Positions 29,644-51,112 of a stretch of DNA of 64,000 nucleotides are shown in pieces. The translations under genes and the position numbers were made by a program. The notes under the pieces are model-generated. The model saw only the letters and a program-made list of their open reading frames with translations, was not told where the DNA came from and did no database searches. Each line of letters begins with the position of its first letter. The first letter of the stretch is position 1. The stretch is taken from the IMG/VR virus record IMGVR_UViG_3300044972_002389, positions 1 to 64,000 of that record; one strand, given 5' to 3'.

Positions 29644-29662
29644 CAGATAAAAGACCGTATAA

Positions 29663-30538: not shown

Positions 30539-30539
30539 G

Positions 30540-30713: not shown

Positions 30714-30893
30714 ATTACAAGATGATATTTGTCAAGACAATCACTACTGTCGCAGTCAATTACTATTGCAATCATTCACTATTGCAAAATAGTGCTTATA
30801 GTATCTCACTTGATAACAACAACAAAAACTCTATCTCGGAGGTCTCATCAATACTACTATGCCAAGATTCTCAGGAACTTAAGGAGACATAAT

Positions 30894-31397: not shown

Positions 31398-31416
31398 TTT
31401 CAATCTCTAAATTGTA

Positions 31417-32409: not shown

Positions 32410-32417
32410 TATAAATA
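32410..32417 (+). promoter_or_regulatory. T4-like late promoter TATAAATA heading the RCC1 block
   Basis: Exact motif, intergenic, followed by AAGGAG and an ATG. Confidence 0.75.
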
Positions 32418-32450: not shown

Positions 32451-32708
32451 ATGGCCATAAAAATATCAGGCGTTACAGTCATCGCCGATAACCAAAATTT
32501 GACTATTACTGGGTATGCCAATTTCAGCGGCACATCTGCACTAAAATTGCCTGTGGGCACAGATGGTGAAAGACCAACAGCAGCAACAGGACAAATCCGT
32601 TACAATACTACGCAAGCCAGTTTTGAAGGCTACGACGGCACAGTTTGGGGCAGTTTTGGTGGCCAAGACAACACTGCTCGAACACTAGCTTTGTTGGCAC
32701 TGACTTAA
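32451..32708 (+). CDS. Small virion/fibre adaptor protein
   Basis: LKLPVGTDGERP..GQIRYNT..FEGYDGTVW module, also present near the N-terminus of the 1645..9138 protein. Confidence 0.75.
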   Translation: MAIKISGVTVIADNQNLTITGYANFSGTSALKLPVGTDGERPTAATGQIRYNTTQASFEGYDGTVWGSFGGQDNTARTLALLALT

Positions 32709-32712
32709 TCAC

Positions 32713-34062
32713 ATGTCTGTGGCTGCTGGCAAACTCATCACACAAGCCAACGCATGCATTGTCTTGGCCAATCAAGATGTTCTGCAAACTGCTCAGTTGG
32801 CAGGTATTCAAGCGGCTTTGAATGGGATCTATTGTGTAGCAAATTGTGCAGCATTGCCAACAGCATGTGACAATACAGGCAGGTTTATTTGGATAACGGA
32901 CATTGGCGACTATCGCTACAGTGATGGCACCCAATGGACCAATGACTTCAATACAAATTGGACAGGCGCATGTGTGTTTGGGTGGGGTTGGAACCTCTGT
33001 GGAGGTTTGGGCAATAATACAACAACTTCCCAGAGTTCACCTGTTCGAGAAATAAGCTCAAGCTGCAATTGGGTTACTGTCACTAGCAATACAACATCAG
33101 CAGGAATAAAATCAGACCTTTCACTATGGACTTGGGGTTACAACAATTGTGGTGCACTGGGCAATAATGCAACAGCTAACCAAAGTAGTCCAGTTCGTGA
33201 AATAAGTAGTTCTTCAACCTGGACAAGTGTAGGGTCATTTGCGTTCCATCTTTTGGCTTTAAAATGTGATAGCACACTGTGGGCATGGGGCGACAACTTT
33301 TGCGGTAATTTGGGCGATGGCACCAAAACAACCCGCAGTTCTCCAATCCGCGAGGTATCATCAAGTACAAATTGGTGTTCAATCAGCAGTGGAGGGCTGC
33401 GACACTCTGCTGCTGTCAAGTCTGATGGCAGTCTGTGGACCTGGGGAGTCAACACATGTGGAGTACTGGGAACCAACAACACAACTAACTTCAGTTCACC
33501 AGTGCGAGAAATAACAAGCGGAACCTCCTGGTGCAGAATACAAAACGGTTACAACCTAGCAGTTGCGTTGAAAAAAGACAATACACTTTGGAGCTGGGGC
33601 TCAGGTGGATATGGCGTTCTCGGTAACAACTCTACCTCAAATGCCAGCAGCCCAGTTCGAGAAGTTTCCAGCTCTACAAATTGGTGCACATTTGGGCCTG
33701 GCAAGTATCATTCAAATGCTATAAAAACCGATGGCACTCTGTGGGCATGGGGTTTAAATACATGTGGAGAGCTGGGAAATAATACTGCAACCAGCCGGAG
33801 CAGTCCTATACAAGAAATTTCATCATCAACAACTTGGTGTCAAGTATCTGGTGGATGCGCGCATACCGCGGCGTTAAAAACAGATGGCACATTGTGGACC
33901 TGGGGAAATGCATCATGTGGCGCGTTGGGGAACAACACAGTTACATCAGTTTCCAGTCCTGTGAGAGAGATAACATCAGCCACGTCGTGGAGTTGTGTAA
34001 CTAGCAGTACAAGGCAAACAATGGCCATTCAAGGTAAAATTTCAGGATTTGTAGCACTATGA
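32713..34062 (+). CDS. RCC1/BLIP-II repeat beta-propeller protein 1
   Basis: 7 repeats LWxWGxNxCGxLGxN..SSPVREI..W. Confidence 0.9.
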   Translation: MSVAAGKLITQANACIVLANQDVLQTAQLAGIQAALNGIYCVANCAALPTACDNTGRFIWITDIGDYRYSDGTQWTNDFNTNWTGACVFGWGWNLCGGLGNNTTTSQSSPVREISSSCNWVTVTSNTTSAGIKSDLSLWTWGYNNCGALGNNATANQSSPVREISSSSTWTSVGSFAFHLLALKCDSTLWAWGDNFCGNLGDGTKTTRSSPIREVSSSTNWCSISSGGLRHSAAVKSDGSLWTWGVNTCGVLGTNNTTNFSSPVREITSGTSWCRIQNGYNLAVALKKDNTLWSWGSGGYGVLGNNSTSNASSPVREVSSSTNWCTFGPGKYHSNAIKTDGTLWAWGLNTCGELGNNTATSRSSPIQEISSSTTWCQVSGGCAHTAALKTDGTLWTWGNASCGALGNNTVTSVSSPVREITSATSWSCVTSSTRQTMAIQGKISGFVAL

Positions 34063-35378
34063 ACTTAAATCAAATTGAATTTGCCCTTAGCCAAAAAATC
34101 GCAGCAGGCAACGACAATCTAGATTTGCTCACATATACACGGGCTATTCAACAACTGAGAACAGGCGCTATGTTTGTTGTAGCCTGTTCTCAATTATTAC
34201 CTACTGCATCAGCCAGCAATGGTAAATTGTATTTGGTTGAAGACGCTCAAAGAGTAGTTTTCAGTAATTCTGTATTTTGGATTCCTATTGTATCACAGTC
34301 TAACACAGGTTGGGCGTGGGGGTCAAACAGTTGTGGACAATTGGGCACAAGTAATACAACCAATCAATCAAGTCCTGTCAGAGAGATTACAAGCTCCTGC
34401 AACTGGCTGCAACTCAGAGCTGGTTCGGTAAATTCAATGGGGTTAAAACAGGATAGTTCCTTATGGCTTTGGGGCAATAACGTATGTGGTCAGTTGGGAG
34501 ACAACACTGTTACCAGTAAGTCAAGTCCTGTAAGAGAAATCACCAGCAGCACAACTTGGTGTCAAATAGGTACGTCTTTTTACACAATGTCTGGTGTTAA
34601 AAGTGATGGCAGTTTGTGGGCATGGGGAAAGAACACATATGGCCAAGTGGGTGATAACACTATAGTTAACAAATCTAGCCCAGTGCGTGAAATCAGCAGC
34701 AGTGCCACTTGGTGCCAAACCTCACCTGGATATTCGCATACTGCTGCACTAAAAACAGATGGAACCCTTTGGGGTTGGGGAAATAATGGGACTGGGCAAC
34801 TGGGCACATGCAATCTGTCTAATAGGTCTAGTCCTGTGCGAGAAATTTCCAGTTCAACCAATTGGTGTCAAGTTTCTGCCGGCCTCTACGGTACCCTAGC
34901 ACTCAAAACAAGTGGTACTTTATGGGGATGGGGGTCAAACGAGTGTGGCAAATTTGGCAATAATAGCACTAGCAATGTATCAAGTCCCGTTCAAGAGATA
35001 AGTAGCTCCACCACTTGGTGTCAAACTTCCGCTGGGTTTGCTCACTCTATTGCCTTAAAAACAACTAACACACTATGGGCATGGGGTTGCAACGCTTGTG
35101 GTGCTTTAGGAGACAACTCTACTGTATCCAGGAGCTCACCAATTCAGGAAGCAACAAGTGCAACCAATTGGTGCCAAGTCACTGCCGGCTTTGGCAGAAG
35201 TGGCGCTTTAACAACCGCAAGCACTTTATGGATGTGGGGTAATAACAATTGTGGCCAACTTGGTAACAACTCTACAATCAGAAGTTTATTGCCTATACGT
35301 GAAATATCCAGTTCAAGCTCCTGGAGTGAAGTTAGCATAGGACAGGGCCTGTTTACTGTAGCCCGGCAAACAATTTAA
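34059..35378 (+). CDS. RCC1 repeat protein 2
   Basis: 7 RCC1-like repeats. Confidence 0.9.
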   Translation: MNLNQIEFALSQKIAAGNDNLDLLTYTRAIQQLRTGAMFVVACSQLLPTASASNGKLYLVEDAQRVVFSNSVFWIPIVSQSNTGWAWGSNSCGQLGTSNTTNQSSPVREITSSCNWLQLRAGSVNSMGLKQDSSLWLWGNNVCGQLGDNTVTSKSSPVREITSSTTWCQIGTSFYTMSGVKSDGSLWAWGKNTYGQVGDNTIVNKSSPVREISSSATWCQTSPGYSHTAALKTDGTLWGWGNNGTGQLGTCNLSNRSSPVREISSSTNWCQVSAGLYGTLALKTSGTLWGWGSNECGKFGNNSTSNVSSPVQEISSSTTWCQTSAGFAHSIALKTTNTLWAWGCNACGALGDNSTVSRSSPIQEATSATNWCQVTAGFGRSGALTTASTLWMWGNNNCGQLGNNSTIRSLLPIREISSSSSWSEVSIGQGLFTVARQTI

Positions 35379-35395
35379 GATAAAAGGAATAAAAT

Positions 35396-36046
35396 ATGTA
35401 TGTGTTAGTACATAACGAAAGAGTGTTGGTAGGTCCAATGAGTTGGAATAGGCCAATGTTTGAAGGCGGTCTGGACCGCCTTAAGATTTCAGCATTGCTG
35501 CCGCGCAATGACCCTGAAACCGTTCCTATTGTGATAGACGATGCCACCTATTTGACCACAGCACAGCTGGTGATACCCGATCATAACTCTCGAACACAAA
35601 CCTATTATGGTCCGTTCTGGGATTTCACTAATCCTGCAATTGCCGTTGGTACATTTGAGATCAAATACAAGCAAATTTGGGAGATACAAGCTCAGTTGCG
35701 AGACGAGGCACAAGCCAATCGCTACACTGCTGAAGTGGGTGGCACACACACTGTGATACAAGGTAAAAAAGTTACTATTGACACTAGCAGAGAAGGTAGG
35801 AACATTTTTGTGCAAAAATACTCTCTTATGGCAACTGATGAAACAGTGAATTGGAAGTTTCCGGAAACTTGGCTCACTCTCACAAAAGATGAATTAGGCC
35901 AATGCGTCGCTGCTGGTGCAGCGCATATTCAAGCCACATTTGACTGGGAAAAACTCAAAGATGATGAAATCACTGCCTCAACCACTATAGAGGAGTTGGA
36001 AGTGTTAGTGGTAGGCAACGTGCCCAATCTAGTGAGTGGTGGTTAA
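35396..36046 (+). CDS. DUF4376-like tail-associated protein
   Basis: RYTAEVGG..IDTSREGR..VNWKF..HIQATFDWE pattern; AAGGA RBS. Confidence 0.6.
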   Translation: MYVLVHNERVLVGPMSWNRPMFEGGLDRLKISALLPRNDPETVPIVIDDATYLTTAQLVIPDHNSRTQTYYGPFWDFTNPAIAVGTFEIKYKQIWEIQAQLRDEAQANRYTAEVGGTHTVIQGKKVTIDTSREGRNIFVQKYSLMATDETVNWKFPETWLTLTKDELGQCVAAGAAHIQATFDWEKLKDDEITASTTIEELEVLVVGNVPNLVSGG

Positions 36047-36057
36047 GGAAGCGCAAG

Positions 36058-37431
36058 ATGGCCAATAACCTCTGCTGTGCAACACTTCTCAACTCTGTGG
36101 TGAGCGAAATATGCTCAAGTGGCACACTCACATGCAGTATGGATGTGGTGTTAGCAGCAGCATCACAAGACGCTGTTGACAGTAATCGGAGTAGTTTCAT
36201 CAGCATAGATACCTTATTTGGTTGCAGTTGTTCAACTGGGTTACCAAATGGGCATGTTGTTTTTTTGTGCGATGCACTTGTGCCCGTAGTGAGCCTCAAT
36301 GGCTGTTGGATTGGTTTTGATGGCAGGAATTTCACTCCTACAGTGGGAGGAGCTCTTTGGAGTTGGGGCGGCAACAACAACGGTCGATTGGGAGACAACA
36401 CTATTACCAATCGCTCAAGCCCAGTAAGAGAAATCACCAGCAGCACCACTTGGTGTCAAACTTCAGCTGGCTTTTATCATACCAGTGCATTAAAAACAGA
36501 TGGCACACTTTGGAGTTGGGGCAGAGGCAACTACGGTCGATTGGGAGACAACACTGCTACAAGTAAGTCAAGTCCTGTAAGAGAAATCACCAGCAGCACC
36601 ACTTGGTGTCAAACTACGTCTGATAACAGAAGTACACATGCAATAAAAACAGATGGTTCACTTTGGAGTTGGGGCAGCAATGCCTCTGGTCAGTTGGGAG
36701 ACAACACTATTACCAATCGCTCAAGCCCAGTAAGAGAAATCACCAGCAGCACCACTTGGTGTCAAACAGCATCCAGTAATTATACTGCCAGTGCAGTAAA
36801 AACAGATGGCACACTTTGGAGTTGGGGCTCCGGCGGCTATGGTCGATTGGGAGACAACACTGCTACAAGTAAGTCAAGTCCTGTAAGAGAAATCACCAGC
36901 AGCACCACTTGGTGTCAAACTTCAGCTGGTGGTATAAGCACTAGTGCTATAAAAAAAGACGGCACACTTTGGAGTTGGGGAGGAGGTTTGCAGTTGGGAG
37001 ACAACACAACAACAAACCGGTCAAGTCCAGTGAGAGAAGCCAGCAGCAGCACTACTTGGTGTCAAACATCAGTTGGATATCGGCACGCGTCTGCAATAAA
37101 AACAGATGGCGCTCTTTGGAGTTGGGGCTCTAACGGGTGTGGTCAGTTGGGAGACAACACAACAACTGGTCGCTCAAGTCCAGTGAGAGAAATCACCAGC
37201 AGCACCACTTGGTGTCAAACTTCGGCTGGTTGTGTCAATAACAGTGCATTAAAAACAGATGGTACACTTTGGACTTGGGGAGGCAATTTGTGTGGTCAGT
37301 TGGGAGACAACACTATTACCAATCGATCAAGTCCAGTGAGAGAAATCACCAGCAGCACCACTTGGTGTCAAACTTCGGCTGGTAAAGTGGATACTAGTGC
37401 TATTAAAACTATATTAGTTGTTCCGCAATAA
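36058..37431 (+). CDS. RCC1 repeat protein 3
   Basis: 7 near-identical repeats. Confidence 0.9.
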   Translation: MANNLCCATLLNSVVSEICSSGTLTCSMDVVLAAASQDAVDSNRSSFISIDTLFGCSCSTGLPNGHVVFLCDALVPVVSLNGCWIGFDGRNFTPTVGGALWSWGGNNNGRLGDNTITNRSSPVREITSSTTWCQTSAGFYHTSALKTDGTLWSWGRGNYGRLGDNTATSKSSPVREITSSTTWCQTTSDNRSTHAIKTDGSLWSWGSNASGQLGDNTITNRSSPVREITSSTTWCQTASSNYTASAVKTDGTLWSWGSGGYGRLGDNTATSKSSPVREITSSTTWCQTSAGGISTSAIKKDGTLWSWGGGLQLGDNTTTNRSSPVREASSSTTWCQTSVGYRHASAIKTDGALWSWGSNGCGQLGDNTTTGRSSPVREITSSTTWCQTSAGCVNNSALKTDGTLWTWGGNLCGQLGDNTITNRSSPVREITSSTTWCQTSAGKVDTSAIKTILVVPQ

Positions 37432-37432
37432 C

Positions 37433-38794
37433 ATGACCACATCAGCAAAAACACTACAAACACAAATTACTTCACGTTTGGCAGCAGGTGGGCTTACTCC
37501 ATTAAGCTGTTGTCAGTTGCAGGGTGCACAATGTATTCTCGACACTCAAGCAGTGGTTTCTTTTTCCAATCTCGCTGCTTTGCCCACTGCGACCTTGAAT
37601 CAAGGAAGGATGGTGTATCTACAAGACACTTGCCAGTATCGCGTCAGTGATGGCATTTGTTGGACAACAGACTTTCGAAGCATCGTGCAGCGTGTTGAAC
37701 CCAGCGTTTTTTCTTGGGGAGCCAATGGGTTTGGTCAGTTGGGAGACAACACTGTTACTTGTCGGTCAAGTCCGGTGAGAGAAATCAGCAACAGCGGCAA
37801 TTGGTGTCAAACTTCGGCTGGTGGTGGTCACACCAGTGCAATAAAAACAGATGGCTCGCTTTGGAGTTGGGGCTATAACACGGGTGGTTCGTTAGGAGAC
37901 AACACAACAACAAGTCGCTCAAGTCCCGTAAGAGAAATCAGCAGCAGCAGTAATTGGTGCCAAACTGCGGCTGGTAGTAATAGTCCCACTAGTGCAATAA
38001 AAACTGATGGCACACTTTGGGTGTGGGGACTCAATCTCTGTGGGCAGTTGGGCGATAACACAACAACAAGTCGCTCAAGTCCGGTAAGAGAAATCAGCAG
38101 CAGCAGCAATTGGTGCCAAATTGCCTTTGGTGCGAGCATAGCTAGTGCAGTTAAAACAGATGGTTCACTATGGACTTGGGGATGTGGTATTTGGGGTCAG
38201 TTAGGAGACAACTCCACCAATACGCGGTCAAGTCCAGTGAGAGAAATCACCAGTTCCACCAATTGGTGCCAAACTTCCCCTGGAAGTCAAGTATCCAGTG
38301 CAGTGAAAACAGACTCCACATTGTGGGTTTGGGGACGCAATTTCTGCGGTACATTGGGAGACGGAACCTCAACCAATAGATCAAGTCCAGTGAGAGAAGC
38401 CCTCTCTAGTACTTCTTGGTGTCAAACTGCCTCAGGTTCCAATGCCGGCACCGCAGTAAAAACAGATGGCACACTTTGGACCTGGGGGTACGGCAGTTGT
38501 GGTGTGTTGGGAAACAACACCACCGCATGTACTGGAGTACCAGGGCGAGAAATCACCAGCAGCAATAATTGGTGTCGAACCTCAACTTCCAGAAATCAGA
38601 CAGTCAGTGCATTGAAAACCGATGGTTCACTTTGGAATTGGGGCCGGAACCAGTATGGTCAGTTGGGAGACAACACAACAACTGGTCGCTCAAGTCCAGT
38701 AAGAGAAATCAGCAGTTTTACTACTTGGTTTCAAACTTCGGCATCTGCCCATATTAGTGCCTTAAAAATCCTAACCTGCAAAGGATTCCTTTGA
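37433..38794 (+). CDS. RCC1 repeat protein 4
   Basis: 7 repeats; ATG at 37433. Confidence 0.9.
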   Translation: MTTSAKTLQTQITSRLAAGGLTPLSCCQLQGAQCILDTQAVVSFSNLAALPTATLNQGRMVYLQDTCQYRVSDGICWTTDFRSIVQRVEPSVFSWGANGFGQLGDNTVTCRSSPVREISNSGNWCQTSAGGGHTSAIKTDGSLWSWGYNTGGSLGDNTTTSRSSPVREISSSSNWCQTAAGSNSPTSAIKTDGTLWVWGLNLCGQLGDNTTTSRSSPVREISSSSNWCQIAFGASIASAVKTDGSLWTWGCGIWGQLGDNSTNTRSSPVREITSSTNWCQTSPGSQVSSAVKTDSTLWVWGRNFCGTLGDGTSTNRSSPVREALSSTSWCQTASGSNAGTAVKTDGTLWTWGYGSCGVLGNNTTACTGVPGREITSSNNWCRTSTSRNQTVSALKTDGSLWNWGRNQYGQLGDNTTTGRSSPVREISSFTTWFQTSASAHISALKILTCKGFL

Positions 38795-40134
38795 TGTCTA
38801 CCATCAATGTAGCTAATCTAGTGTTCACAATGCAGCAAAAAATATCCAGCACTACTAATGAGCAGGATTTGTTTTACTACAGCAAGGTATTGCAGCAGTT
38901 GAGAAGCGGCAAGGTGTATGTGGTGAACGCAGTGACTGATTTACCAACAGCCGCCGCAAATGTGGGTGAATTGTATTATGTTGTGTTGAATACCTCACTG
39001 TATGTGGCCACAGTTACGGGATGGGGTGTTATAGGTACTACTCCCCTAAACCAAATTTGGAGTTGGGGCTTTAACGGGTGTGGTCGGTTAGGAGACAACA
39101 CTGTCACTAGTCGCTCAAGTCCAGTGAGAGAAATCACCAGTTCCACCACTTGGTGTCAAACTTCAGCCGCCGCTGCCAACGGTGGTAGGACTAGTGCAAT
39201 AAAAACAGATAGCACACTGTGGACTTGGGGCTACAATGTCTCTGGTCAGTTGGGAGATAACACTGTTACAAGTCGCTCAAGTCCTGTAAGGGAAATCACA
39301 AGCTCAACCACTTGGTGTCAAACTTCAGCTGGTAATGCCCACACAAGCGCATTGAAAACAGATAGCACACTTTGGAGTTGGGGAAATGCATCCTGTGGTA
39401 CGCTGGGAAACAACACTGTCACTAGTCGCTCAAGCCCAGTGAGAGAAATCACCAGCTCAACTACTTGGTGTCAAACTTCGTCAGGCGGGTTTAACAGCGG
39501 CAGCCATACCAGTGCATTAAAAACAGATGGCACACTTTGGACTTGGGGCTGGAACGGTTGGGGTCAGTTGGGAGACAACACTGTTACGGCTAAGTCAAGT
39601 CCAGTGAGAGAAAGTAGCAGTTCAACCACTTGGTGTCAAACTTCAGCAGGCCCTACGAATACTGCTGCAATAAAAACAAATGGCACACTTTGGACTTGGG
39701 GAGAAAACGGGTCGGGCCAGCTGGGAAACAACACCATCACTAATAGTTCAAATCCAAACATAGAAATTACCAACAGCACCAATTGGTGTCGAACTTCAGC
39801 TGGTATCCATACCGCTGCAATAAAAACAGATGGCTCCCTGTGGACTTGGGGATACAATGGCTCTGGTCAGTTGGGAGACACCACTGTTACCAATCGCTCA
39901 AGTCCTGTAAGGGAAATCACCAGTTCCACCACTTGGTGTCAAACTTCTGTCGGGTGGATACATACCAGTGCATTAAAAATATATGGCACACTTTGGACTT
40001 GGGGCGGCAATGGCTCTGGTCAGTTGGGAGACACCACTGTTACCAATCGCTCAAGTCCTGTAAGGGAAATCACCAGTTCCACCACTTGGCGTCAAACATC
40101 AGCTGGTGGTTTTCACACCAGTGCCTTGAAGTAA
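38794..40134 (+). CDS. RCC1 repeat protein 5
   Basis: 7 repeats; TGATG coupling with the previous gene. Confidence 0.9.
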   Translation: MSTINVANLVFTMQQKISSTTNEQDLFYYSKVLQQLRSGKVYVVNAVTDLPTAAANVGELYYVVLNTSLYVATVTGWGVIGTTPLNQIWSWGFNGCGRLGDNTVTSRSSPVREITSSTTWCQTSAAAANGGRTSAIKTDSTLWTWGYNVSGQLGDNTVTSRSSPVREITSSTTWCQTSAGNAHTSALKTDSTLWSWGNASCGTLGNNTVTSRSSPVREITSSTTWCQTSSGGFNSGSHTSALKTDGTLWTWGWNGWGQLGDNTVTAKSSPVRESSSSTTWCQTSAGPTNTAAIKTNGTLWTWGENGSGQLGNNTITNSSNPNIEITNSTNWCRTSAGIHTAAIKTDGSLWTWGYNGSGQLGDTTVTNRSSPVREITSSTTWCQTSVGWIHTSALKIYGTLWTWGGNGSGQLGDTTVTNRSSPVREITSSTTWRQTSAGGFHTSALK

Positions 40135-40147
40135 ATGGAGACAGAAC

Positions 40148-41497
40148 ATGCCAACACCCTCTGAAATCCAAACTAGTATTGACTCATTAATAACTGCTTG
40201 CGACAGTGTTTGTTTTCCTTTGTTAGCAGCCCAAACCAGTGCTGCTGGAGTTGGCATTAGTTTTGTTGTTAACACAGTATCAGACTTACCTGACCTAGCT
40301 ACAAAGTGCATAGGTTTTGGTCAAACAGTTTTTGTCAAAAGTATTTGTGTACCTGTAATATCCACTTGTACTTCATGGGTGGGATTGGATGGTAGGGTTT
40401 TACGTCGAGATTGGCCTCTTAGACAGATGTGGACTTGGGGTCGTAATATATGCGGTCCGTTAGGAGACAACACTGTTACAAGTCGCTCAAGTCCAGTGAG
40501 AGAAATCACCAGTTCTGTCACTTGGTGTCAAACTTCGGCAGGCAGCGCCTTCACTAGTGCAATAAAAACAGATAGCACACTGTGGACTTGGGGATACAAT
40601 GTCCAGGGTCAGTTGGGAGTCAACACTGTTACAAGTCGCTCAAGTCCTGTAAGGGAAATCACCAGTTCAACTACTTGGTGTCAAACTTCAGCTGGTAATT
40701 CTCACAACAGTGCATTAAAAACAGATGGTACACTTTGGACTTGGGGATATAACGGGTGTGGCAGATTGGGAGATAACACTGTTACAAGTCGCTCAAGTCC
40801 AGTGAGAGAAATCACCAGTTCAACCACTTGGTGTCAAACATCAAGTGGTAGTTTTCACACCAGTGCATTAAAAACAGATGGTACACTTTGGAGTTGGGGA
40901 AATAACTATTGCGGTATGTTAGGAGACACCACTGTTACCAATCGCTCAAGTCCTGTAAGGGAAATCACCAGTTCCACCACTTGGCGTCAAACATCAGCTG
41001 GTAAAGGTATTACCATCAGTGCAGTAAAGACAGATGGCACACTTTGGAGTTGGGGGTGTAATAGGTGTGGGCAGTTGGGAGATAACACTGTTACCAATCG
41101 CTCAAGTCCGGTGAGAGAAATAAGCAGCAGCACCACTTGGTGTCAAACTTCGGCAAGCGCCTGGACTAGTGCAATAAAAACAGATGGCACACTTTGGAGT
41201 TGGGGATTTAACCAGTGTGGGCAGTTAGGAATCAACAACACAGGTCTACTATCAAGTCCAGGGAGAGAAATCACCAATTCCACCACTTGGTGTCAAACTT
41301 CAGCTGGTAGTAATCACAACACTGCAATAAAGACAGATGGCACACTTTGGACTTGGGGATTTAACGATTGCGGTGTGTTAGGAGATAACACTGTTACCAA
41401 TCGCTCAAGTCCGGTGAGAGAAATAAGCAGCAGCACCGCGTGGTGTCAAACTTCGGCCGGTTCCATGACGGCTGCAATTCTCCAGTGCTATAACTAG
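40148..41497 (+). CDS. RCC1 repeat protein 6
   Basis: 7 repeats; GGAG RBS. Confidence 0.9.
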   Translation: MPTPSEIQTSIDSLITACDSVCFPLLAAQTSAAGVGISFVVNTVSDLPDLATKCIGFGQTVFVKSICVPVISTCTSWVGLDGRVLRRDWPLRQMWTWGRNICGPLGDNTVTSRSSPVREITSSVTWCQTSAGSAFTSAIKTDSTLWTWGYNVQGQLGVNTVTSRSSPVREITSSTTWCQTSAGNSHNSALKTDGTLWTWGYNGCGRLGDNTVTSRSSPVREITSSTTWCQTSSGSFHTSALKTDGTLWSWGNNYCGMLGDTTVTNRSSPVREITSSTTWRQTSAGKGITISAVKTDGTLWSWGCNRCGQLGDNTVTNRSSPVREISSSTTWCQTSASAWTSAIKTDGTLWSWGFNQCGQLGINNTGLLSSPGREITNSTTWCQTSAGSNHNTAIKTDGTLWTWGFNDCGVLGDNTVTNRSSPVREISSSTAWCQTSAGSMTAAILQCYN

Positions 41498-41529
41498 CAC
41501 ACAGTCAAATCGCCAACTAAGCTTACTGG

Positions 41530-42360
41530 ATGACCCTTACTCTATTCACCATCACAAACATCCAGCACGAACTCACTAGTTTCTCACTTCAAAAAACCCT
41601 TGCCTCTACACCGATCACCACCACAATTGTGGTGTCAGATCAACCATTAACTCTTGCACAACCCCATACACAATATCCAATTCCAGAAAACTTTGGCATG
41701 CTGGAATACTGTGATTTCTGCCTCAAGAGCATGCACAGCTACATCAACACTGATTTTGTGTTGATAGCACACTATGATGGCATAGCCACAAACCCCAAAG
41801 CCTGGACTGATGAATATTTTGAATATGATTACGTGGGCAGCCTCTCGCATCCTGAATTTCCGCCAATGAAAGGCAGCCTGCAAGCCAGTGGCCACTACCA
41901 AGAATTTAAAAACGCAGATTGGTTCACCTGTGGCGGAGGATTAAGCTTGCGAAGCCGTCGCCTCCTCAAAATCCTAGCTGAAGATCCCCAGATCAAAACC
42001 CGGAACTACACCCCCAATCACAACACGCCCTTCATCAGTGAGGATGCTGTGATTACACTGCTCAACCAGAATTACCTTGAAACTGCCTACAACATTCGAT
42101 TCGCTCCAGCACATATCAGCTTAAAATTCTGTGCAGAAGTGCTCACTGGTTACACCTCAGCATTGGGATTTCATGGTTGGTACAACGCACCTTTGTATCT
42201 CAGCGAACAAGAATGCCTCTTCTACTTTGAACATTTGGAAAAAATTGACTACAACAAAAACACCATGCAAGGGCAATTATTGAAATTTCACACCATGATG
42301 AAGGGATATTTACATTTACGTGATTATTTGATTTCTCAGGACAAATGGCTATTATACTAA
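41530..42360 (+). CDS. DUF5672-like (GT-A-like) protein
   Basis: INTDFVLIAHYDG..WTDEYFEYDYVG..GGGLSLRSRRLL..SED..GFHG. Confidence 0.7.
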   Translation: MTLTLFTITNIQHELTSFSLQKTLASTPITTTIVVSDQPLTLAQPHTQYPIPENFGMLEYCDFCLKSMHSYINTDFVLIAHYDGIATNPKAWTDEYFEYDYVGSLSHPEFPPMKGSLQASGHYQEFKNADWFTCGGGLSLRSRRLLKILAEDPQIKTRNYTPNHNTPFISEDAVITLLNQNYLETAYNIRFAPAHISLKFCAEVLTGYTSALGFHGWYNAPLYLSEQECLFYFEHLEKIDYNKNTMQGQLLKFHTMMKGYLHLRDYLISQDKWLLY

Positions 42361-42363
42361 GTT

Positions 42364-43968
42364 ATGAACATATTGGGAATGAATTTTTCTCACGACGGTG
42401 CTGTGGCAGTTGTGAAAAATGGCAGATTAACAGCAGCTTTGGGAACAGAACGTGTTACTAGAGAAAAAAAGGCTTTTGGTGTAACCAACAAAACAATTGA
42501 GGCTATACTTCAGGAAGCTTCACTTAAACCTGAGGACATCAGTTGCATAGCATTGGCTGACTACAAGGCCAACCACAGCAACGGTGTCTTGGCACTATAT
42601 GACAGTGATGGCAACACTGTGGAGAGAACTGCCTACTCACTCTACAACAACGACGTGCGAACGCTTACAGGTGTTTTCCTCGGCAGCCACAAAATACCAG
42701 TGTATGTGCTGCCACATCATTTGGCGCATGCCAGCAGTGCCTACTACACTAGCAATTTTGATAAGGCCATTTGTTTCAGCTTAGACAGCAGTTTTGGCGA
42801 ACTTGGCGACAACAACATGGTGTTTTTTGGTGAAGGCACTAAGCTTCAAGCTCAAATGTGCCCAACACTCATCTCAGGTATTGGGTATGCCATCTTCACC
42901 GAGCTGTTGGGTTTCTCCCCAGCCTACAGCAAGGCAGGCACCACCATGGGACTCAGCAGTTATGGTAAATCACTCACTGGCCCTATTTTTGATGAGATTT
43001 TGAAAAAACAATGGTTCAGTGTTCAAGAACACGCTGAGTTGGAATACAGGAAGTTCTGGAGCAATGTGTGGGAAAAACTCATTGCCAAGCACCCACATGA
43101 GCTCACACACAAGGAAAGCAGTGATTTGGCTGCTACTATTCAAGAGCTACTGGAGAAGAGTGTTCTGGAAACACTAGCTACACTGCACCAAATTTATCCG
43201 CAACGACAGTTATGCCTCAGTGGTGGCAGCATGCTGAACTGCATCTTGAACAGCCGGATAGCTGAAAGCAAGCTTTGGGAGGGCATTCATCACTTTCCTG
43301 CATGTGGCGATGACGGCAATGCGGTGGGCGCCGCTCTTTGGGTAGCGCACCATTTGTTTGACTTACCAAGGCAAAATTATCAACCGCAGAATTTATGTTA
43401 TTTGGGACCTTCTCAAAACACTACCTCCATTGTGGACTACACTAGAGTTTGTGAGCTACTGGCTCAAGGAGCTATAGTGGCCTGGCACTGGGGCAGAAGC
43501 GAATATGGGCCTCGAGCACTGGGCCACAGAAGTCTTTTGGCTGATGCACAAAGCTATCACATGCGTGAGAAAATAAATTTCGCAGTGAAAAACAGAGAAT
43601 GGTTTCGACCTATTGCGCCTGTGGTGTTGCAGGAACACGCCCACGATTGGTTCTCCTTGCCAATACCCTCGAGCCCCTACATGCTTTACACTGCACAAGT
43701 GCTGAAGCCGCAACTGATTCCAGCAGTGTGTCATGTGGACAACAGTGCACGCCCGCAAACTGTTACAGCTGAACAAAATCCCCAGTTGCACCAACTGCTC
43801 ACTTGTTACCATCAATTGACAGGCGTTCCTGTGCTGTGCAACACCAGCTTGAATGGCGCTGGAGAGCCCATTATGGAAACTCCTGAACAGAGTTTGAGAT
43901 TTTTTGAAACCAATGACAGCGTTGCCGCACTGATGTTGAATGGACAGCTTTTGGAGAAATCACAATGA
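42364..43968 (+). CDS. Carbamoyltransferase (NodU/CmcH family)
   Basis: SHDGAVA, ERVTREK, HHLAHA, MGLSSYG, LSGGSMLN, EYGPRALGHRS, KNREWFRPIAP, HVDNSARPQTV, NTSLN. Confidence 0.93.
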   Translation: MNILGMNFSHDGAVAVVKNGRLTAALGTERVTREKKAFGVTNKTIEAILQEASLKPEDISCIALADYKANHSNGVLALYDSDGNTVERTAYSLYNNDVRTLTGVFLGSHKIPVYVLPHHLAHASSAYYTSNFDKAICFSLDSSFGELGDNNMVFFGEGTKLQAQMCPTLISGIGYAIFTELLGFSPAYSKAGTTMGLSSYGKSLTGPIFDEILKKQWFSVQEHAELEYRKFWSNVWEKLIAKHPHELTHKESSDLAATIQELLEKSVLETLATLHQIYPQRQLCLSGGSMLNCILNSRIAESKLWEGIHHFPACGDDGNAVGAALWVAHHLFDLPRQNYQPQNLCYLGPSQNTTSIVDYTRVCELLAQGAIVAWHWGRSEYGPRALGHRSLLADAQSYHMREKINFAVKNREWFRPIAPVVLQEHAHDWFSLPIPSSPYMLYTAQVLKPQLIPAVCHVDNSARPQTVTAEQNPQLHQLLTCYHQLTGVPVLCNTSLNGAGEPIMETPEQSLRFFETNDSVAALMLNGQLLEKSQ

Positions 43969-44507
43969 AAATCTATATTGGCGCAGGTGAAGACAGGATT
44001 GATGGATATGTGCACTGTGACTACGATCCCAACTGCAATCCTGATTTTTGTTTTGACCTTGAAAAAGACATTTTCCCATTTCCCACCAACAGTGTAGATG
44101 TGTTGAGAGCCACTCATGTGTTAGAGCACTTGGGCGAGGGGTATTTTCACTGTCTGCAGGAAATTTATCGAGTGTGCAAACCTGGGGCAAGAGTACATAT
44201 TCATGTACCTCATCACCGCAGTGATGACTTCTTCAGCGACCCCACGCACAAACGCCCAGTCACTGTAGATGGCTTGCGCTTGTTTGGCTGCAAATACAAC
44301 CAATTGGCACGCAAGCAAGGTGCACATGCCAGTAGGCTTGCCGAACGCTACAATGTGGATTTTGAGGTGGTGGACTACAGCTTGCGACCCATGGAAAAAT
44401 ACAAAGATCAATTTGTGGGGCAACCTAAAGAACAGGTAGAGCAGTATCTTGAACAGCACTGTAACATAATCGACGAAGTCTACATTCAGTTAGTGGTAGT
44501 AAAGTAA
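43965..44507 (+). CDS. Class I SAM-dependent methyltransferase
   Basis: IYIGAG, HVLEHL, EIYRVCKPGA, DPTH. Confidence 0.82.
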   Translation: MKIYIGAGEDRIDGYVHCDYDPNCNPDFCFDLEKDIFPFPTNSVDVLRATHVLEHLGEGYFHCLQEIYRVCKPGARVHIHVPHHRSDDFFSDPTHKRPVTVDGLRLFGCKYNQLARKQGAHASRLAERYNVDFEVVDYSLRPMEKYKDQFVGQPKEQVEQYLEQHCNIIDEVYIQLVVVK

Positions 44508-44510
44508 CCC

Positions 44511-45866
44511 ATGAGCTCAACATTTGAGCATGTGAAAACCACAGCACTGGAGTTGGCCAAACAGGAAAATCATCCACTGGCATTTCAACTCTTGGACCAT
44601 TATTGGCCCAGAGCGCAAACACTGCTAGAGCTGGAAACTTTGGGCACAGTGAGCCTAAAGATTGGTCATACAGACTTGGCTGTCAAGTGTGCTGAAACTG
44701 TTGCAGGTATGTGCACTACACCTGAAGAATCTTATGTAGCAAGAGTGAACTTAGGCAAAGCCTATTATCGTGCAAATCAGCCAGAAAAAGCATTATTTTA
44801 CAATAAGATAAATTTGGAAATGCGCCCAAATGACTTTGACGCTATAGTGAGTTATGCTGCCAGTTTGAAGTTAAATGGTGAGCGTGGCGAGAGCGAAAGA
44901 GTAATAAATGATTTGAAGTGTCAGCCTTGGGTCACAGCTGACCAGTGCGAGAATCTGCGCATAACTGACACTCATCCACTGCTCCGAGCTGGACAAACTG
45001 CTGAAGGAATTCGGTGGTTCCTACACACGGACAGAGATCGCACAACTGTTTTTGACATCAAAGGAATGAGAATTTGGAATGGAGTGAAGGTGCCAGGCCA
45101 AACTCTCTATGTGAATGCCTGCGGAGGAGCTGGTGACGAGCTCATCAACATCAGGTTCTTCAACCATCTCAAAAACTTGGGTATGCAACCAAAACTTTTC
45201 AGCATATTAGACCGCCCTGGATTAGCCCAAGTGTTCCGCCGACATGGATTTGAAGTGTTGGTGAATGAGGAGGAGATTGATGTTCATCAGCCCTGGACTT
45301 ATCTCATGAACTTGCCTATTGATTTGGGTGTTGGCGAACAAGACCTTTGGAAAGGGCCTTATCTCACAGCGTCTGGCCAACCTCATACCAAACTGCCTGC
45401 GTCAAAAAAACTACGTGTTGGGGTAAAATGTCAAGGCAACCCTTATTTTGAGCAGGACATTTATCGCTGTATTCCTTTGGAGCAGATGCTGAGTGTGATA
45501 CCCTCGGATGTTGAAATCTACAATTTTGATCTACAGCACACGCACGAGAGATGCCATAATCTTCGAGCCAGGATCAACTCCTGGGACGACACACTGGACT
45601 ATCTCAGTCAAATGGATATTGTGCTCAGCAGTTGTACTAGTATAATACATGCAGCCGCCAGTATGGGAGTGCCTGGGATTGTGTGTGTGCCTATTTTGGA
45701 ATATTATGTTTGGACCAGCACACATACTGACGAGAGCACGCCATGGTATTCAAAAAGCTTACGTGTACTGAAGCAACAGACTCCAGGGTGTTGGTCTACA
45801 CCATTGCAGAGAGCAGGTGAAATTATTAAAACAACTCTACGAGAAAAACAACAAAATGACAACTGA
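44511..45866 (+). CDS. TPR protein with C-terminal GT9-like glycosyltransferase domain
   Basis: TPR helices, then GAGDELINIRF, SWDDTLDYLSQMDIVLSSCTSIIHAAASMG, PWY. Confidence 0.8.
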   Translation: MSSTFEHVKTTALELAKQENHPLAFQLLDHYWPRAQTLLELETLGTVSLKIGHTDLAVKCAETVAGMCTTPEESYVARVNLGKAYYRANQPEKALFYNKINLEMRPNDFDAIVSYAASLKLNGERGESERVINDLKCQPWVTADQCENLRITDTHPLLRAGQTAEGIRWFLHTDRDRTTVFDIKGMRIWNGVKVPGQTLYVNACGGAGDELINIRFFNHLKNLGMQPKLFSILDRPGLAQVFRRHGFEVLVNEEEIDVHQPWTYLMNLPIDLGVGEQDLWKGPYLTASGQPHTKLPASKKLRVGVKCQGNPYFEQDIYRCIPLEQMLSVIPSDVEIYNFDLQHTHERCHNLRARINSWDDTLDYLSQMDIVLSSCTSIIHAAASMGVPGIVCVPILEYYVWTSTHTDESTPWYSKSLRVLKQQTPGCWSTPLQRAGEIIKTTLREKQQNDN

Positions 45867-46635: not shown

Positions 46636-46637
46636 GC

Positions 46638-47453: not shown

Positions 47454-47820
47454 AAGTTGCGGGAGTTGCACTGCCTGTTGTGAAGGCCATCTCTATGGCA
47501 ATGCCTATGGAAACATTCAAACTCGCGGCACCCCCTGCAGATTTTTGCACACCACAGGTTGCACCATTTACATCACTAAACCTGAATTCTGCACTCGGTT
47601 TCAATGCCTTTGGCTACAAGGGCTGTTGGACGACAGCATGCGTCCCAGTGAGTGCGGGCTCTTGGTCACTGTTGAAAGAATGGCAGACAAAACACAAAGG
47701 TTGCATGCGACAGAAGTTTGGCCGCAAGTGCCTCTCAGCAGCTATCAAAACTTGGCAAAATGGGCCAAAGACTTAGACACCACCTGGGAATTGCGAAAGT
47801 ACCATGAGCTACAATCCTGA
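47443..47820 (+). CDS. YkgJ-like Cys-cluster (putative Fe-S/Zn) protein
   Basis: CGSCTACC..PCRFL..GCTIY..PEFCTRFQCLWL. Confidence 0.78.
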   Translation: MPNRSCGSCTACCEGHLYGNAYGNIQTRGTPCRFLHTTGCTIYITKPEFCTRFQCLWLQGLLDDSMRPSECGLLVTVERMADKTQRLHATEVWPQVPLSSYQNLAKWAKDLDTTWELRKYHELQS

Positions 47821-51083: not shown

Positions 51084-51112
51084 ATAACCAAAAACCTCAA
51101 GGAGTAAATTAT

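What the first reader, a model, noticed from the sequence alone, without database searches (positions are those of the whole stretch)
32713..41497. Six-gene RCC1 propeller array with constant frameworks and hypervariable loops
Seen: 42 blades in six paralogues downstream of one late promoter. In genes 3-6 the framework (GxLGDNT..RSSPVREITSSTTWCQTS; SAxKTDGTLWxWG) is nearly invariant even at synonymous sites. Variation and indels concentrate in two short loops: after WG (GNNN, RGNY, SNAS, YNTG, CGIW, WNGW) and after QTS (AGFYH, AGGIS, AAAANGGR, SGGFNSGSH, AGKGIT). N-terminal domains differ and pair up roughly (1 with 4, 2 with 5, 3 with 6). Known: RCC1/BLIP-II propellers bind partners through loops on one face. 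Inference: an antibody-like repertoire of virion adhesins, possibly assembled as heteromers and diversified by blade shuffling rather than by a DGR.
Basis: partly seen in the sequence, partly recalled or inferred. Interest (0 to 1): 0.7.

Follow-up and report, generated by a model that had tools for sequence, protein, structure and literature searches.

The report
Six-gene phage RCC1 propeller array
A lake-water jumbo phage carries six tandem genes for seven-bladed RCC1 propellers whose scaffolds are kept alike by recombination while the loops on one face differ freely, which fits a set of virion host-binding proteins; similar arrays are already known in other large phages.

Summary
Six tightly packed genes (32713-41497) each encode an 85-100 aa N-terminal domain plus seven RCC1 blades, 42 in all and the only RCC1 repeats in the record. 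They follow a TATAAATA motif and a conserved 85-aa ORF, and a DUF4376 ORF sits between genes 2 and 3.

Variation is concentrated after WG and after QTS. These loops lie on one propeller face, by strand topology and by alignment to UVR8.

"Invariant at synonymous sites" is overstated: framework pS is 0.43.

N-terminal domains are orthologous across five related lake phages, all with six intact genes. Propellers instead cluster by genome, which is concerted evolution. Exact tracts of up to 82 nt are bounded by the loops.

Between close strains, loop pN/pS is about 1.1 against 0.2 for the framework.

No reverse transcriptase and no A-biased changes were found, so this is not a DGR. Five assemblies of this phage are identical, so there is no ongoing diversification.

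The array lies in an ~18 kb island, with glycan-modifying genes, that is 64-69% identical between phages whose flanks are ~98% identical.

Best reading: fibre-associated virion adhesins. This is inferred from context and from published virion proteomes of other phages. It is a new member of a known kind.

The parts
32410..32417 (+). TATAAATA, a T4-type late-promoter-like motif, 33 nt upstream of the 85-aa ORF
   Evidence: In the 148-kb record 10 of 11 copies are intergenic and 8-9 lie 5-40 nt before an ORF. The phage has a T4-type gp23 capsid protein.
32451..32708 (+). 85-aa ORF (orf85) with a phage fibre/virion-protein motif and a C-terminal ARTLALLALT tail; first gene of the operon
   Evidence: It hits PHROG families of virion structural and baseplate proteins. 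It is 100% identical in relative L013. Its C-terminal motif matches the C-terminus of a >=1007-aa collagen-like fibre that directly precedes gene 1 in relative L003.
32713..34062 (+). RCC1 gene 1 (449 aa): type-A N-terminal domain plus 7 blades; diverged scaffold
34059..35378 (+). RCC1 gene 2 (439 aa): type-B N-terminal domain plus 7 blades; diverged scaffold
35396..36046 (+). 216-aa DUF4376 protein (a domain of tail-fibre and fibre-assembly proteins), kept at this position in all relatives
   Evidence: Pfam PF14301 at E 1.3e-11. phrog_10508 'tail fiber protein'. Same position in L003, L012, L013 and L010.
36058..37431 (+). RCC1 gene 3 (457 aa): type-C N-terminal domain plus 7 blades; internal two-blade duplication (b1~b3, b2~b4)
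   Evidence: Matches phrog_4219 at E 2e-37.
37418..38794 (+). RCC1 gene 4 (458 aa): type-A N-terminal domain plus 7 blades
38791..40134 (+). RCC1 gene 5 (447 aa): type-B N-terminal domain plus 7 blades; this is the protein that was modelled
   Evidence: AF2 pTM 0.72. Foldseek TM 0.8-0.86 to UVR8, HERC2 RLD and RCC1.
40148..41497 (+). RCC1 gene 6 (449 aa): type-C N-terminal domain plus 7 blades
   Evidence: Shares an 81-nt exact tract (blade 4) with gene 5 blade 7.
41530..51083 (+). Downstream genes of the same divergent island: DUF5672, carbamoyltransferase, two methyltransferases, a TPR protein, a sulfotransferase, a GT2 glycosyltransferase, a ParA/NUBPL-like ATPase and unknowns
   Evidence: Gene gaps are -4 to 32 nt. 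This stretch is 69% identical to L013/L010, while the flanks are 97.5-98.6% identical.
33052..51100 (.). ~18-kb divergent island. The left edge lies inside gene 1. The right edge lies between 50953 and 51454.
   Evidence: blastn of L013, L014 and L010 against the window

Best explanation
This is a late-transcribed operon in the tail-fibre region of a T4-related jumbo phage from lake water. It encodes six paralogous proteins.

Each protein has:
- a short N-terminal anchor, made of a helical hairpin plus a small beta module of a kind found in phage fibre proteins;
- a seven-bladed RCC1 propeller.

Evolution (shown):
- The array arose as a duplicated triplet, with N-terminal types A-B-C-A-B-C. 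It predates the split of at least five related phages, all of which keep six intact genes.
- The propellers evolve in concert. Recombination or gene conversion between the near-identical blade scaffolds homogenises them within a genome.
- The short loops after WG and after QTS interrupt the homology and stay different in every blade. Both loops project from the same face.
- Between close strains these loops change at about the neutral rate, while the scaffold and anchor are under strong purifying selection.
- The whole array, together with a neighbouring set of glycan-modifying enzymes, is exchanged between otherwise ~98% identical phages as a deeply divergent ~18-kb allele.

Function (inferred):
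- The six proteins are virion-borne. They are attached through their N-terminal domains to fibre or baseplate structures.
- They use the variable face to bind host-surface ligands.
- This gives the phage a fixed panel of six different binding surfaces that is replaced by recombination. It is not generated anew in each generation.
For: Fold and repeat count.

One-face variability:
- The four strands per blade and the alternating loops come from the AF2 secondary structure.
- Loop A aligns to UVR8 W94/D96 and loop B to the UVR8 GWRHT motif. Both are on the UVR8 dimer face (my own knowledge of the UVR8 structures).

Concerted evolution:
- The N-terminal tree groups by gene position with the minimum of 5 label changes. 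The propeller tree groups by genome (L012 100/100, window g3-6 89/99).
- Orthologous blades are no more alike than random blades (0.21 against 0.20).
- Exact tracts of 74-82 nt span codons ~9-35 between the two loops, including the non-equivalent pair g5b7 and g6b4.

Selection:
- L014 against L010 gives pN/pS of 0.16 for the N-terminal domain, 0.22 for the framework, 1.18 for loop A and 1.05 for loop B.
- Lake strain variants split as 13N:3S in loops and 8N:10S in the framework. 13 of 25 nonsynonymous changes fall in the 22% of codons that form the loops (p=0.0009).

Conservation: six intact genes in all five lineages.

Island.

Fibre context:
- Collagen-like fibre, Gly-rich protein, tail-fibre chaperones and DUF4376.
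- In L003 a collagen-like fibre of at least 1007 aa ends at the start of gene 1 and shares its C-terminal motif with orf85.
- The N-terminal beta module matches tail-fibre, minor-tail and collagen-fibre proteins in BFVD, weakly (best E 4e-4), and T4 gp9/10_N at TM 0.44.

RCC1 propellers elsewhere in phages:
- One is fused to a T7-type tail-fibre N-terminal domain in Pseudomonas phage PollyC, and one sits in a 'tail fiber protein' of phage Littlefix.
- The same PHROG family (4219) as three tandem RCC1 proteins found by MS in E. coli phage W70 virions (PMC11370258).
- RCC1-like proteins are in the virion proteome of GAP32, and ~40-kDa 'DNA condensation proteins' that are presumably the RCC1-like ones are in that of phAPEC6 (PMC5259590, PMC7247149).

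Late promoter motif.
Against: - There is no direct evidence that these six proteins are in the virion or bind anything.
- Loop pN/pS is about 1, which is equally what unconstrained loops would give. Positive selection is not demonstrated.
- Between the deeper lineages synonymous sites are saturated, so no rate test is possible there.
- The array is no more divergent than the neighbouring enzyme genes of the same island (64-67% against 69%). The divergence between lineages is therefore an island property, not array-specific hypermutation.
- The structural matches of the N-terminal domain are weak.
- The AF2 model is of moderate confidence (pLDDT 69), and I could not measure coordinates. The face assignment rests on topology and homology.
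- Five assemblies of this phage are identical.
Confidence: 0.55

Rival explanations
1. The six proteins are structural or decorative virion components, or simply tolerated paralogues. Their loops vary only because they are unconstrained. There is no binding repertoire, and the concerted evolution is a by-product of tandem repeats.
For: Loop pN/pS is about 1 in two independent comparisons. Hypervariable positions are at background identity between lineages. There is no variation among five assemblies.
Against: - All six genes are kept intact in five lineages whose synonymous sites are saturated.
- The variable positions are confined to one face, while the opposite-face loops (EITSSTT, KTDGT) are nearly invariant.
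- The island is exchanged as a deeply divergent allele between ~98% identical phages. This pattern is typical of host-interaction loci.
Confidence: 0.2
2. The proteins are late but not part of the virion. They bind host or phage proteins inside the cell (for example as inhibitors, in the way BLIP-II inhibits beta-lactamase, or as anti-defence decoys), or they serve as substrates or scaffolds for the neighbouring glycan-modifying enzymes.
For: RCC1 propellers are generic protein-binding platforms (Foldseek matches to RCC1, HERC2 and RPGR). RCC1 genes and a homologous TPR protein plus sugar-modifying genes occur together both here and in Synechococcus phage S-SRM01.
Against: - The operon is embedded in fibre genes and follows a late-type motif.
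- RCC1 homologues in other phages were found in purified virions or fused to tail-fibre anchors (PMC11370258, PMC7247149).
- The N-terminal module resembles fibre modules.
Confidence: 0.13
3. The proteins are internal head ('inner body') proteins that organise packaged DNA, as was suggested for the eleven RCC1-like proteins of jumbo coliphage phAPEC6.
For: The suggestion appears in PMC7247149. The phage is a jumbo phage with a T4-type capsid.
Against: - That suggestion rested only on the name RCC1.
- The proteins here are not basic: K+R is about equal to D+E.
- They are encoded among fibre and fibre-chaperone genes.
- One-face hypervariability and allele-like island exchange have no rationale for a DNA scaffold.
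Confidence: 0.05
4. The loops are diversified by a programmed mechanism: a DGR or another targeted mutator.
For: Variation is focused on a few codons in a conserved scaffold.
Against: - No reverse transcriptase in the 148-kb record or in the 223-, 310- and 329-kb records of the same phage.
- The strain variants show all twelve substitution types with no adenine bias.
- Five assemblies are identical.
- No template-like extra blade exists outside the genes.
Confidence: 0.02

Closest known systems
Tandem RCC1-like paralogues of large myoviruses: E. coli phage W70 gp237-239; Rak2-like jumbo phages 121Q (13 copies), phAPEC6 (11), PBECO4 (6) and GAP32 gp1
   Same: Tandem arrays of ~40-50 kDa RCC1-repeat proteins in large, many-fibred myoviruses. 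Window gene 3 matches phrog_4219, the same family as the W70 proteins. The GAP32 protein is a structural match. In those phages the proteins were detected in purified virions (PMC11370258, PMC5259590, PMC7247149).
   Different: - Sequence similarity is too low for tblastn.
- The phage lineage differs: the capsid protein is 83% identical to Sinorhizobium phage Phosso.
- The N-terminal domains here come in three types, arranged as a duplicated triplet.
- The function of the published proteins is unknown. One paper proposed DNA condensation.
- Concerted evolution, one-face variability and island exchange have not been described for them, as far as I found.
RCC1 genes in the tail-fibre region of freshwater cyanophages (Synechococcus phages S-SRM01 and BUCT-ZZ01)
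   Same: These are the nearest isolates by sequence (45-48% identity over the propeller, several copies per genome). In S-SRM01 the genes follow the baseplate wedge and distal long-tail-fibre genes. They are interleaved with a homologous TPR protein, a sulfotransferase, a glycosyltransferase and a sugar epimerase.
   Different: Those phages belong to Kyanoviridae. They have fewer copies, the copies are scattered, the N-termini differ, and in BUCT-ZZ01 the propeller is part of a 700-aa protein.
Tail fibres with a distal RCC1 propeller (Pseudomonas phages PollyC and Littlefix)
   Same: An RCC1 propeller sits at the distal end of a protein that carries a T7-type tail-fibre N-terminal domain or is annotated as a tail fibre (tblastn hits).
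   Different: Those are single fused genes in small podoviruses, known at annotation level only. Here the propeller is a separate small protein with its own anchor, present in six copies.
UVR8, RCC1, HERC2 RLD and BLIP-II propellers
   Same: UVR8, RCC1 and HERC2 RLD share the seven-bladed RCC1 fold (TM 0.8-0.86). The variable loops here correspond to the UVR8 interface motifs WG-W94-G-D96 and GWRHT.
   Different: There is no evidence of GEF, photoreceptor or inhibitor activity. The blade scaffolds here are far more uniform. BLIP-II was not among the top matches and was not tested.
gp38 adhesins of T-even phages, where conserved glycine-rich motifs frame hypervariable segments (from my own knowledge, not tested here)
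   Same: Works alike: conserved DNA and protein motifs serve as recombination sites and scaffold, while short hypervariable segments between them carry the specificity of a fibre-tip adhesin.
   Different: The fold is unrelated and gp38 is a single gene. This is an analogy only.

Membership tests
RCC1-like repeat propeller (Pfam PF00415 / PF25390) | Seven tandem ~50-aa RCC1 repeats scoring above the Pfam thresholds | tested here: met
   All six proteins score RCC1 at E 1e-41 to 1e-50 and WD40_RLD at 197-295 bits against a cutoff of 150. There are 42 repeat matches.
RCC1-like repeat propeller (Pfam PF00415 / PF25390) | Seven-bladed beta-propeller fold | tested here: met
   AF2 model with pTM 0.72 and four strands per repeat. 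Foldseek E 1e-23 and TM 0.82-0.86 to UVR8 and HERC RLDs.
RCC1-like repeat propeller (Pfam PF00415 / PF25390) | Guanine-nucleotide exchange or chromatin binding, as in eukaryotic RCC1 | not testable with these tools
   This is a biochemical property. It is not expected in a phage of bacteria.
Virion-associated RCC1-like paralogue arrays of large phages (PHROG 4219 and relatives) | Profile match to the phage RCC1 families | tested here: met
   phrog_4219 at E 2e-37, phrog_16766 at 4e-31, phrog_7220 at 3e-26.
Virion-associated RCC1-like paralogue arrays of large phages (PHROG 4219 and relatives) | Several tandem paralogues in a large myovirus genome | tested here: met
   Six tandem genes. T4-type capsid protein. 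Records of the same phage reach 329 kb and are still incomplete.
Virion-associated RCC1-like paralogue arrays of large phages (PHROG 4219 and relatives) | Protein present in purified virions | not testable with these tools
   This needs proteomics. It is known only for W70, GAP32 and phAPEC6 (PMC11370258, PMC5259590, PMC7247149).
Diversity-generating retroelement target protein | Reverse transcriptase encoded nearby | tested here: not met
   No RVT_1 match in G000 or in three longer records of the same phage. The genome is incomplete, so absence is not absolute.
Diversity-generating retroelement target protein | Template/variable repeat pair differing at adenines | tested here: not met
   No RCC1 repeat lies outside the genes. 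The variant spectrum has no adenine bias.
Phage tail-fibre / receptor-binding protein | Recognisable fibre-attachment or fibre-type domain | tested here: inconclusive
   The N-terminal model (pLDDT 76) gives weak BFVD matches. The best is E 4e-4 to an unnamed phage protein. The named tail-fibre, minor-tail and collagen-fibre proteins follow at E 0.01-0.2. T4_gp9_10_N matches at TM 0.44. There is no Pfam match.
Phage tail-fibre / receptor-binding protein | Binding to a host receptor | not testable with these tools
   The host is unknown, and this needs an experiment.

The most novel reading that the evidence does not exclude
The uniform blade scaffolds are not just a by-product. They would be the working part of an RT-independent diversification system. 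Homologous recombination between the 42 near-identical scaffolds, and with divergent island alleles in co-infecting relatives, would swap loop-bearing cassettes. Lake populations would then continually produce new propeller faces and so new host specificities. The six proteins might assemble as two A-B-C heterotrimers on fibre tips, and might be glycosylated on their Ser/Thr-rich constant face by the island's own enzymes.
Probability: 0.12. Interest if true: 0.8.

Novelty: new member of a known kind. Interest (0 to 1): 0.45.

Why it matters
RCC1-like paralogue arrays recur in large phages: coliphages of the Rak2 group, W70, freshwater cyanophages and now a Phosso/Atu_ph07-like lake phage. They are still annotated as 'chromosome condensation' or 'DNA condensation' proteins, and their function has not been tested.

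This array, with its five related versions, gives a clear and testable picture:
- an orthologous anchor domain;
- a propeller scaffold homogenised by recombination;
- variation restricted to one face;
- exchange of the whole locus as an allele between near-identical phages.

That pattern points to host recognition rather than DNA handling. If confirmed, the annotation of a widespread phage protein family would be corrected. It would also add a natural 'consensus-scaffold, variable-loop' propeller to the known kinds of phage receptor-binding modules.

Tried and rejected
- **Heterotrimer test.** Complex prediction on the N-terminal domains of genes 4, 5 and 6 returned no verdict (score 0.01). 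It is no evidence either way.
- **Apparent gene loss.** The source gene tables suggested that gene 1 is missing in L014 and L010 and that gene 3 is degenerate in L010. Direct translation showed all of them intact, so this was a gene-calling artefact.
- **Donor blades.** I looked for donors of the clustered strain differences (L010 against L014, and the run X17 variants). No exact donor tract of 16-36 nt was found in the arrays. Paralogous conversion is therefore not proven for those events, and they may come from divergent alleles.
- **Joints in the metagenome runs.** The runs are kept as short Logan contigs that break at the repeats. The many 'skips' and 'goes back' are uninterpretable, and I did not use them as evidence of blade swaps.
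- **dN/dS between the deeper lineages.** This is impossible because synonymous sites are saturated (pS 0.6-0.9).
- **N-terminal domain by sequence.** Pfam found nothing, and ESM Atlas features scored 0.80 or less, which is uninformative. The PDB-wide structural search returned only generic helical hairpins.
- **N-terminal HMM against orf85.** It scored 2.6 bits, which is a hint only.
- **Near-identical isolates.** Megablast of the region against isolated phages found no match.
- **GT9 idea.** The TPR protein gave no Pfam support for a GT9-type glycosyltransferase domain. A faint GT9 hit (E 0.084) on the neighbouring 375-aa protein is not significant.
- **Literature.** 'RCC1' plus 'cyanophage' mostly returned Roscoff culture-collection strain numbers.

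Full report
**What is there**

The region 32713-41497 holds six plus-strand ORFs of 439-458 aa.
- All six score far above threshold for Pfam RCC1 and the RCC1-like domain WD40_RLD.
- Each consists of an 84-100 aa N-terminal part followed by seven ~51-aa repeats, 42 blades in all.
- A genome-wide search found exactly 42 RCC1 repeat matches in the 148-kb record, all inside the array.
  - An 85-aa ORF (32451-32708) ends 4 nt before gene 1.
  - A 216-aa DUF4376 protein (35396-36046) lies between genes 2 and 3.
- Gaps between successive genes run from -14 to +32 nt, and this continues into the downstream genes.
- No plus-strand terminator-like site was found in the region.

**The promoter**

- A TATAAATA motif lies at 32410-32417, 33 nt before the 85-aa ORF.
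- Three copies in 64 kb is not above chance on its own.
- In the whole record, however, 10 of 11 copies are outside long ORFs and 8-9 lie 5-40 nt upstream of an ORF start.
- The phage has a T4-type gp23 capsid protein.
- 'Downstream of one late promoter' is therefore a reasonable reading.

**The phage**

- The window is part of an IMG/VR viral record estimated at 62% complete.
- Records of the same phage reach 329 kb.
- Its capsid protein is 83% identical to that of Sinorhizobium jumbo phage Phosso and 73% to Pseudomonas phage PA5oct.
- It occurs in many lake-water metagenomes. The host is unknown.
- The genome carries at least four collagen-like fibre genes.
- The array is preceded by a collagen-like fibre, a glycine-rich protein and a tail-fibre assembly chaperone.

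**Where the variation is**

- Among the 42 blades, and among 167 blades from four related genomes, Shannon entropy peaks at two positions after WG (3.64 and 3.46 bits) and two in the hairpin after QTS-AG (3.72 and 3.82 bits).
- Intermediate values (2.6-2.7 bits) occur at the fourth residue after WG, at the x of GxLG and at one residue before RSSP.
- Most scaffold columns are below 1.5 bits and many are invariant.
- Indels are almost confined to the second loop.

**Synonymous sites**

The claim of near-invariance at synonymous sites is overstated.
- Pooled over all blade pairs of genes 3-6, the scaffold has pS 0.43 and pN 0.12.
- In genes 1-2 everything is saturated (pS about 0.79).
- The scaffold nevertheless shares DNA-level ancestry or homogenisation.
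  - Codon choice is position-specific. For example, Gln is always CAG at column 10 and always CAA at column 34, and Ser is TCA at column 20 but AGT at columns 21 and 48.
  - Exact shared tracts reach 74-82 nt.
- These tracts run from about codon 9-12 to codon 32-38 of a blade. That is exactly the stretch between the two variable loops.
- They link blades within a gene (g3 b1~b3 and b2~b4, a two-blade duplication; g5 b6~b7). They also link non-equivalent blades of different genes (g5 b7 with g6 b4).

**One face**

- An AlphaFold2 model of gene 5 (pLDDT 69, pTM 0.72) gives four strands per repeat: LWxWG, SSPVRE, WCQTS and TSAIK.
- Foldseek matches it to UVR8, HERC1/2 RCC1-like domains and RCC1 at TM 0.8-0.86.
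- In such a beta-meander, successive loops alternate between the two faces.
  - The loop after WG and the loop after QTS are first and third, so they share a face.
  - EITSSTT and KTDGT are second and fourth. They lie on the other face and are nearly invariant.
- Independently, the sequence alignment to UVR8 puts the WG loop on UVR8 W94/D96 and the QTS loop on the GWRHT motif. Both are on the UVR8 dimer-interface face (my knowledge of the published UVR8 structures).
- I had no access to model coordinates. The face assignment therefore rests on topology and homology, not on measured geometry.

**History of the array**

- Five related versions of the locus were recovered from metagenomes: L003, L012, L013 (identical to L014) and L010/L011.
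- Each has six RCC1 genes in the same order, with DUF4376 between genes 2 and 3.
- The source gene tables seemed to show missing or broken copies. Direct translation shows all of them intact.
- A maximum-likelihood tree of the N-terminal domains groups them by gene position with the minimum possible number of label changes. In it, g1+g4 and g3+g6 are supported sister groups.
- The tree of the propeller domains groups them by genome. L012's six form a 100/100 clade and window g3-g6 form a clade at 89/99.
- Lineage-specific scaffold states, such as TTWCQTS and GTLW here against TNWCQVS and GSLW in L003, are shared by paralogues within a genome.
- At both hypervariable and moderately variable positions, orthologous blades of different genomes are no more alike than random blades (0.21 against 0.20; 0.48 against 0.47).
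- This is concerted evolution of the propellers on a stable, orthologous set of anchors.
- Genes 1 and 2 of the window have largely escaped the latest homogenisation.

**Selection**

Between the deeper lineages synonymous sites are saturated. Two closer comparisons are informative.
- Strains L014 and L010, over all six genes, give these pN/pS values:

| Region | pN/pS |
|---|---|
| N-terminal domains | 0.16 |
| Scaffold | 0.22 |
| Minor variable positions | 0.48 |
| Loop A | 1.18 |
| Loop B | 1.05 |

- Differences between these two strains are patchy, with a ~650-nt stretch of gene 5 about 20% diverged.
- Lake runs X17 and X14 hold a variant strain of the window phage. Among the changed blade codons that the tool listed:
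  - loops have 13 nonsynonymous and 3 synonymous changes;
  - the minor positions have 4 and 0;
  - the scaffold has 8 and 10;
  - Fisher's test for loops plus minor positions against the scaffold gives p=0.016;
  - nonsynonymous changes are enriched in loops (13 of 25 in 22% of codons, p=0.0009), while synonymous changes are not.
- Several changes come as multi-nucleotide clusters (7 of 10 nt in the g2 blade 1 loop B; 8 of 18 nt in g5 blade 3). This looks like tract replacement rather than point mutation.
- No exact donor for these clusters was found in the array.
- The loops therefore evolve at about the neutral rate. That fits either relaxed constraint or a mix of purifying and diversifying selection. 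Positive selection is not demonstrated.

**No programmed diversification**

- No reverse transcriptase was found in this record or in three longer records of the same phage.
- The variant spectrum has no adenine bias.
- Five IMG/VR assemblies from different samples are 100% identical to the window over 21 kb. A sixth differs at four sites outside the array.
- A 99% variant of gene 6 differs at five residues, none in the loops.

**The island**

- Against L013/L014 and L010, the window is 98-99% identical upstream (23845-26616) and 97.5% identical downstream (51454-51812).
- From inside gene 1 (about 33052) to about 51000 it is only 64-69% identical.
- That stretch includes the array and the downstream DUF5672, carbamoyltransferase, methyltransferases, TPR protein, sulfotransferase, GT2 and ParA-like genes.
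- The divergence between lineages is therefore a property of an ~18-kb allele-like island, not of the array alone.
- The 85-aa ORF just upstream is 100% identical between the window and L013.
- In Synechococcus phage S-SRM01, the nearest isolate by RCC1 sequence (48%), RCC1 genes follow baseplate and long-tail-fibre genes. They are interleaved with a homologue of the same TPR protein (E 3e-50), a sulfotransferase, a glycosyltransferase and a sugar epimerase.

**Function**

Direct evidence is lacking. The following pieces favour a virion-surface, fibre-associated role.
- **Fibre context.**
  - Fibre and fibre-chaperone genes surround the array, and DUF4376 lies inside it.
  - In L003 a collagen-like fibre of at least 1007 aa ends exactly at the start of gene 1. 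Its C-terminal motif (ARTLALLGLE) matches the C-terminus of the window's 85-aa ORF.
- **The N-terminal domain.**
  - Its model is a helical hairpin plus a small beta module (pLDDT 76).
  - Its BFVD matches are weak, but the named ones are almost all tail-fibre, minor-tail, collagen-fibre or tail-collar proteins.
  - T4 gp9/10_N and collagen-associated domains appear in the ESM Atlas search.
- **RCC1 propellers in other phage proteins.** They occur in proteins with a T7-type tail-fibre N-terminal domain (PollyC) or annotated as tail fibres (Littlefix).
- **Published virion proteomes.**
  - Three tandem RCC1 proteins of the same PHROG family are found in E. coli phage W70 virions by mass spectrometry (PMC11370258).
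  - An RCC1-like protein is found in GAP32 virions, with 6-13 copies encoded in related 'hairy' jumbo phages (PMC5259590).
  - Several ~40-kDa 'DNA condensation proteins' are in the phAPEC6 virion proteome, presumably its RCC1-like proteins; that phage encodes eleven RCC1-like proteins (PMC7247149).
  - The phAPEC6 authors suggested a DNA-organising inner-body role. That idea rested on the family name, and nothing here supports it.

**Verdict**

The feature is real and well defined.
- It is best described as a conserved six-gene panel of fibre-associated RCC1 propeller proteins. The scaffolds evolve in concert and one face is free to vary. The panel is carried in a recombining host-interaction island.
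- It belongs to an already reported, but functionally uncharacterised, class of tandem RCC1-like virion proteins of large phages.
- 'Antibody-like repertoire' and 'heteromers' remain unsupported. The single complex prediction gave no verdict.

Noticed in passing
window 32451-32708 (orf85); L013 3673-3930; L003 2-2563: The 85-aa ORF before gene 1 is 100% identical in protein between the window and L013, although the adjacent RCC1 genes are only ~65% identical in DNA. Its C-terminal ARTLALLALT motif is also the C-terminus of a collagen-like fibre of at least 1007 aa that occupies the same position in L003. It could be the docking partner of the RCC1 N-terminal domains.
   Followed up: partly
window 26616-31861: Relative to L013/L014, the window has an extra ~5.2 kb. 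It holds most of a collagen-like fibre gene (26226-28238), a 343-aa protein, a Gly_rich_2 protein (29663-30538) and a Phage_tail_APC chaperone (30729-31397). In the relatives the 5' end of the fibre gene appears to join almost directly to the S74-chaperone end at 31861.
   Followed up: partly
window 31841-32391: Two overlapping ORFs in different frames. The first has a Gly/Ser-rich repeat. The second has a Peptidase_S74-type intramolecular chaperone end, called Peptidase_S74 in L010 and L014. It looks like the 3' remnant of a fibre gene. A single-frame translation has 6 stops.
   Followed up: partly
window 41530-51083; L001 (S-SRM01) 7725-17603: A set of sugar/glycan-modifying genes co-varies with the RCC1 array in the island and recurs next to RCC1 genes in an unrelated cyanophage. 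The set comprises DUF5672, a NodU/CmcH-type carbamoyltransferase, two methyltransferases, a sulfotransferase, GT2 and a TPR protein. The RCC1 proteins are 26-31% Ser+Thr with an invariant S/T-rich face, so glycosylation of the propellers is worth testing.
   Followed up: partly
G000 whole record (148 kb); window 1617-1624(-), 32410-32417(+), 63447-63454(+): TATAAATA occurs 11 times. 10 copies are intergenic and most lie 5-40 nt before an ORF start. This is consistent with T4-type late promoters in this Phosso/PA5oct-like phage.
   Followed up: partly
window 1645-9183 (-): A 2512-aa ORF with no Pfam match at E<=0.001.
   Followed up: no
window 21419-24605: The phage encodes a DnaJ (285 aa) and a ClpA/ClpB-type double-AAA ATPase (789 aa) just upstream of the fibre region. 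The Clp protein is 44-47% identical to those of jumbo phages Phosso and Atu_ph07.
   Followed up: no
window 45933, 45957, 45972, 46086: The only four differences between the window and IMG/VR contig L008 over 16 kb are four transitions within 154 nt of the sulfotransferase gene.
   Followed up: no
window 32713-41497: The proteins are Cys-rich (8-19 Cys each). One Cys is nearly invariant in the WCQTS strand, and a frequent second Cys is the last residue of the WG loop (xNxC). Possible disulfides were not assessed, because no coordinates were available.
   Followed up: no
L014 vs L010, array coordinates ~5261-5900 (gene 5): A ~650-nt patch of ~20% divergence sits in a background of 1-3% between two otherwise close strains, with no donor elsewhere in either array. 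This suggests import from a third, more divergent allele.
   Followed up: partly
L012 20168-21281; window 19505-20605 (-): Nucleotide-sugar genes lie near the island: CTP_transf_like plus PfkB in L012, and an NTP_transferase-HAD phosphatase fusion in the window. This hints at phage-encoded activated-sugar synthesis.
   Followed up: no
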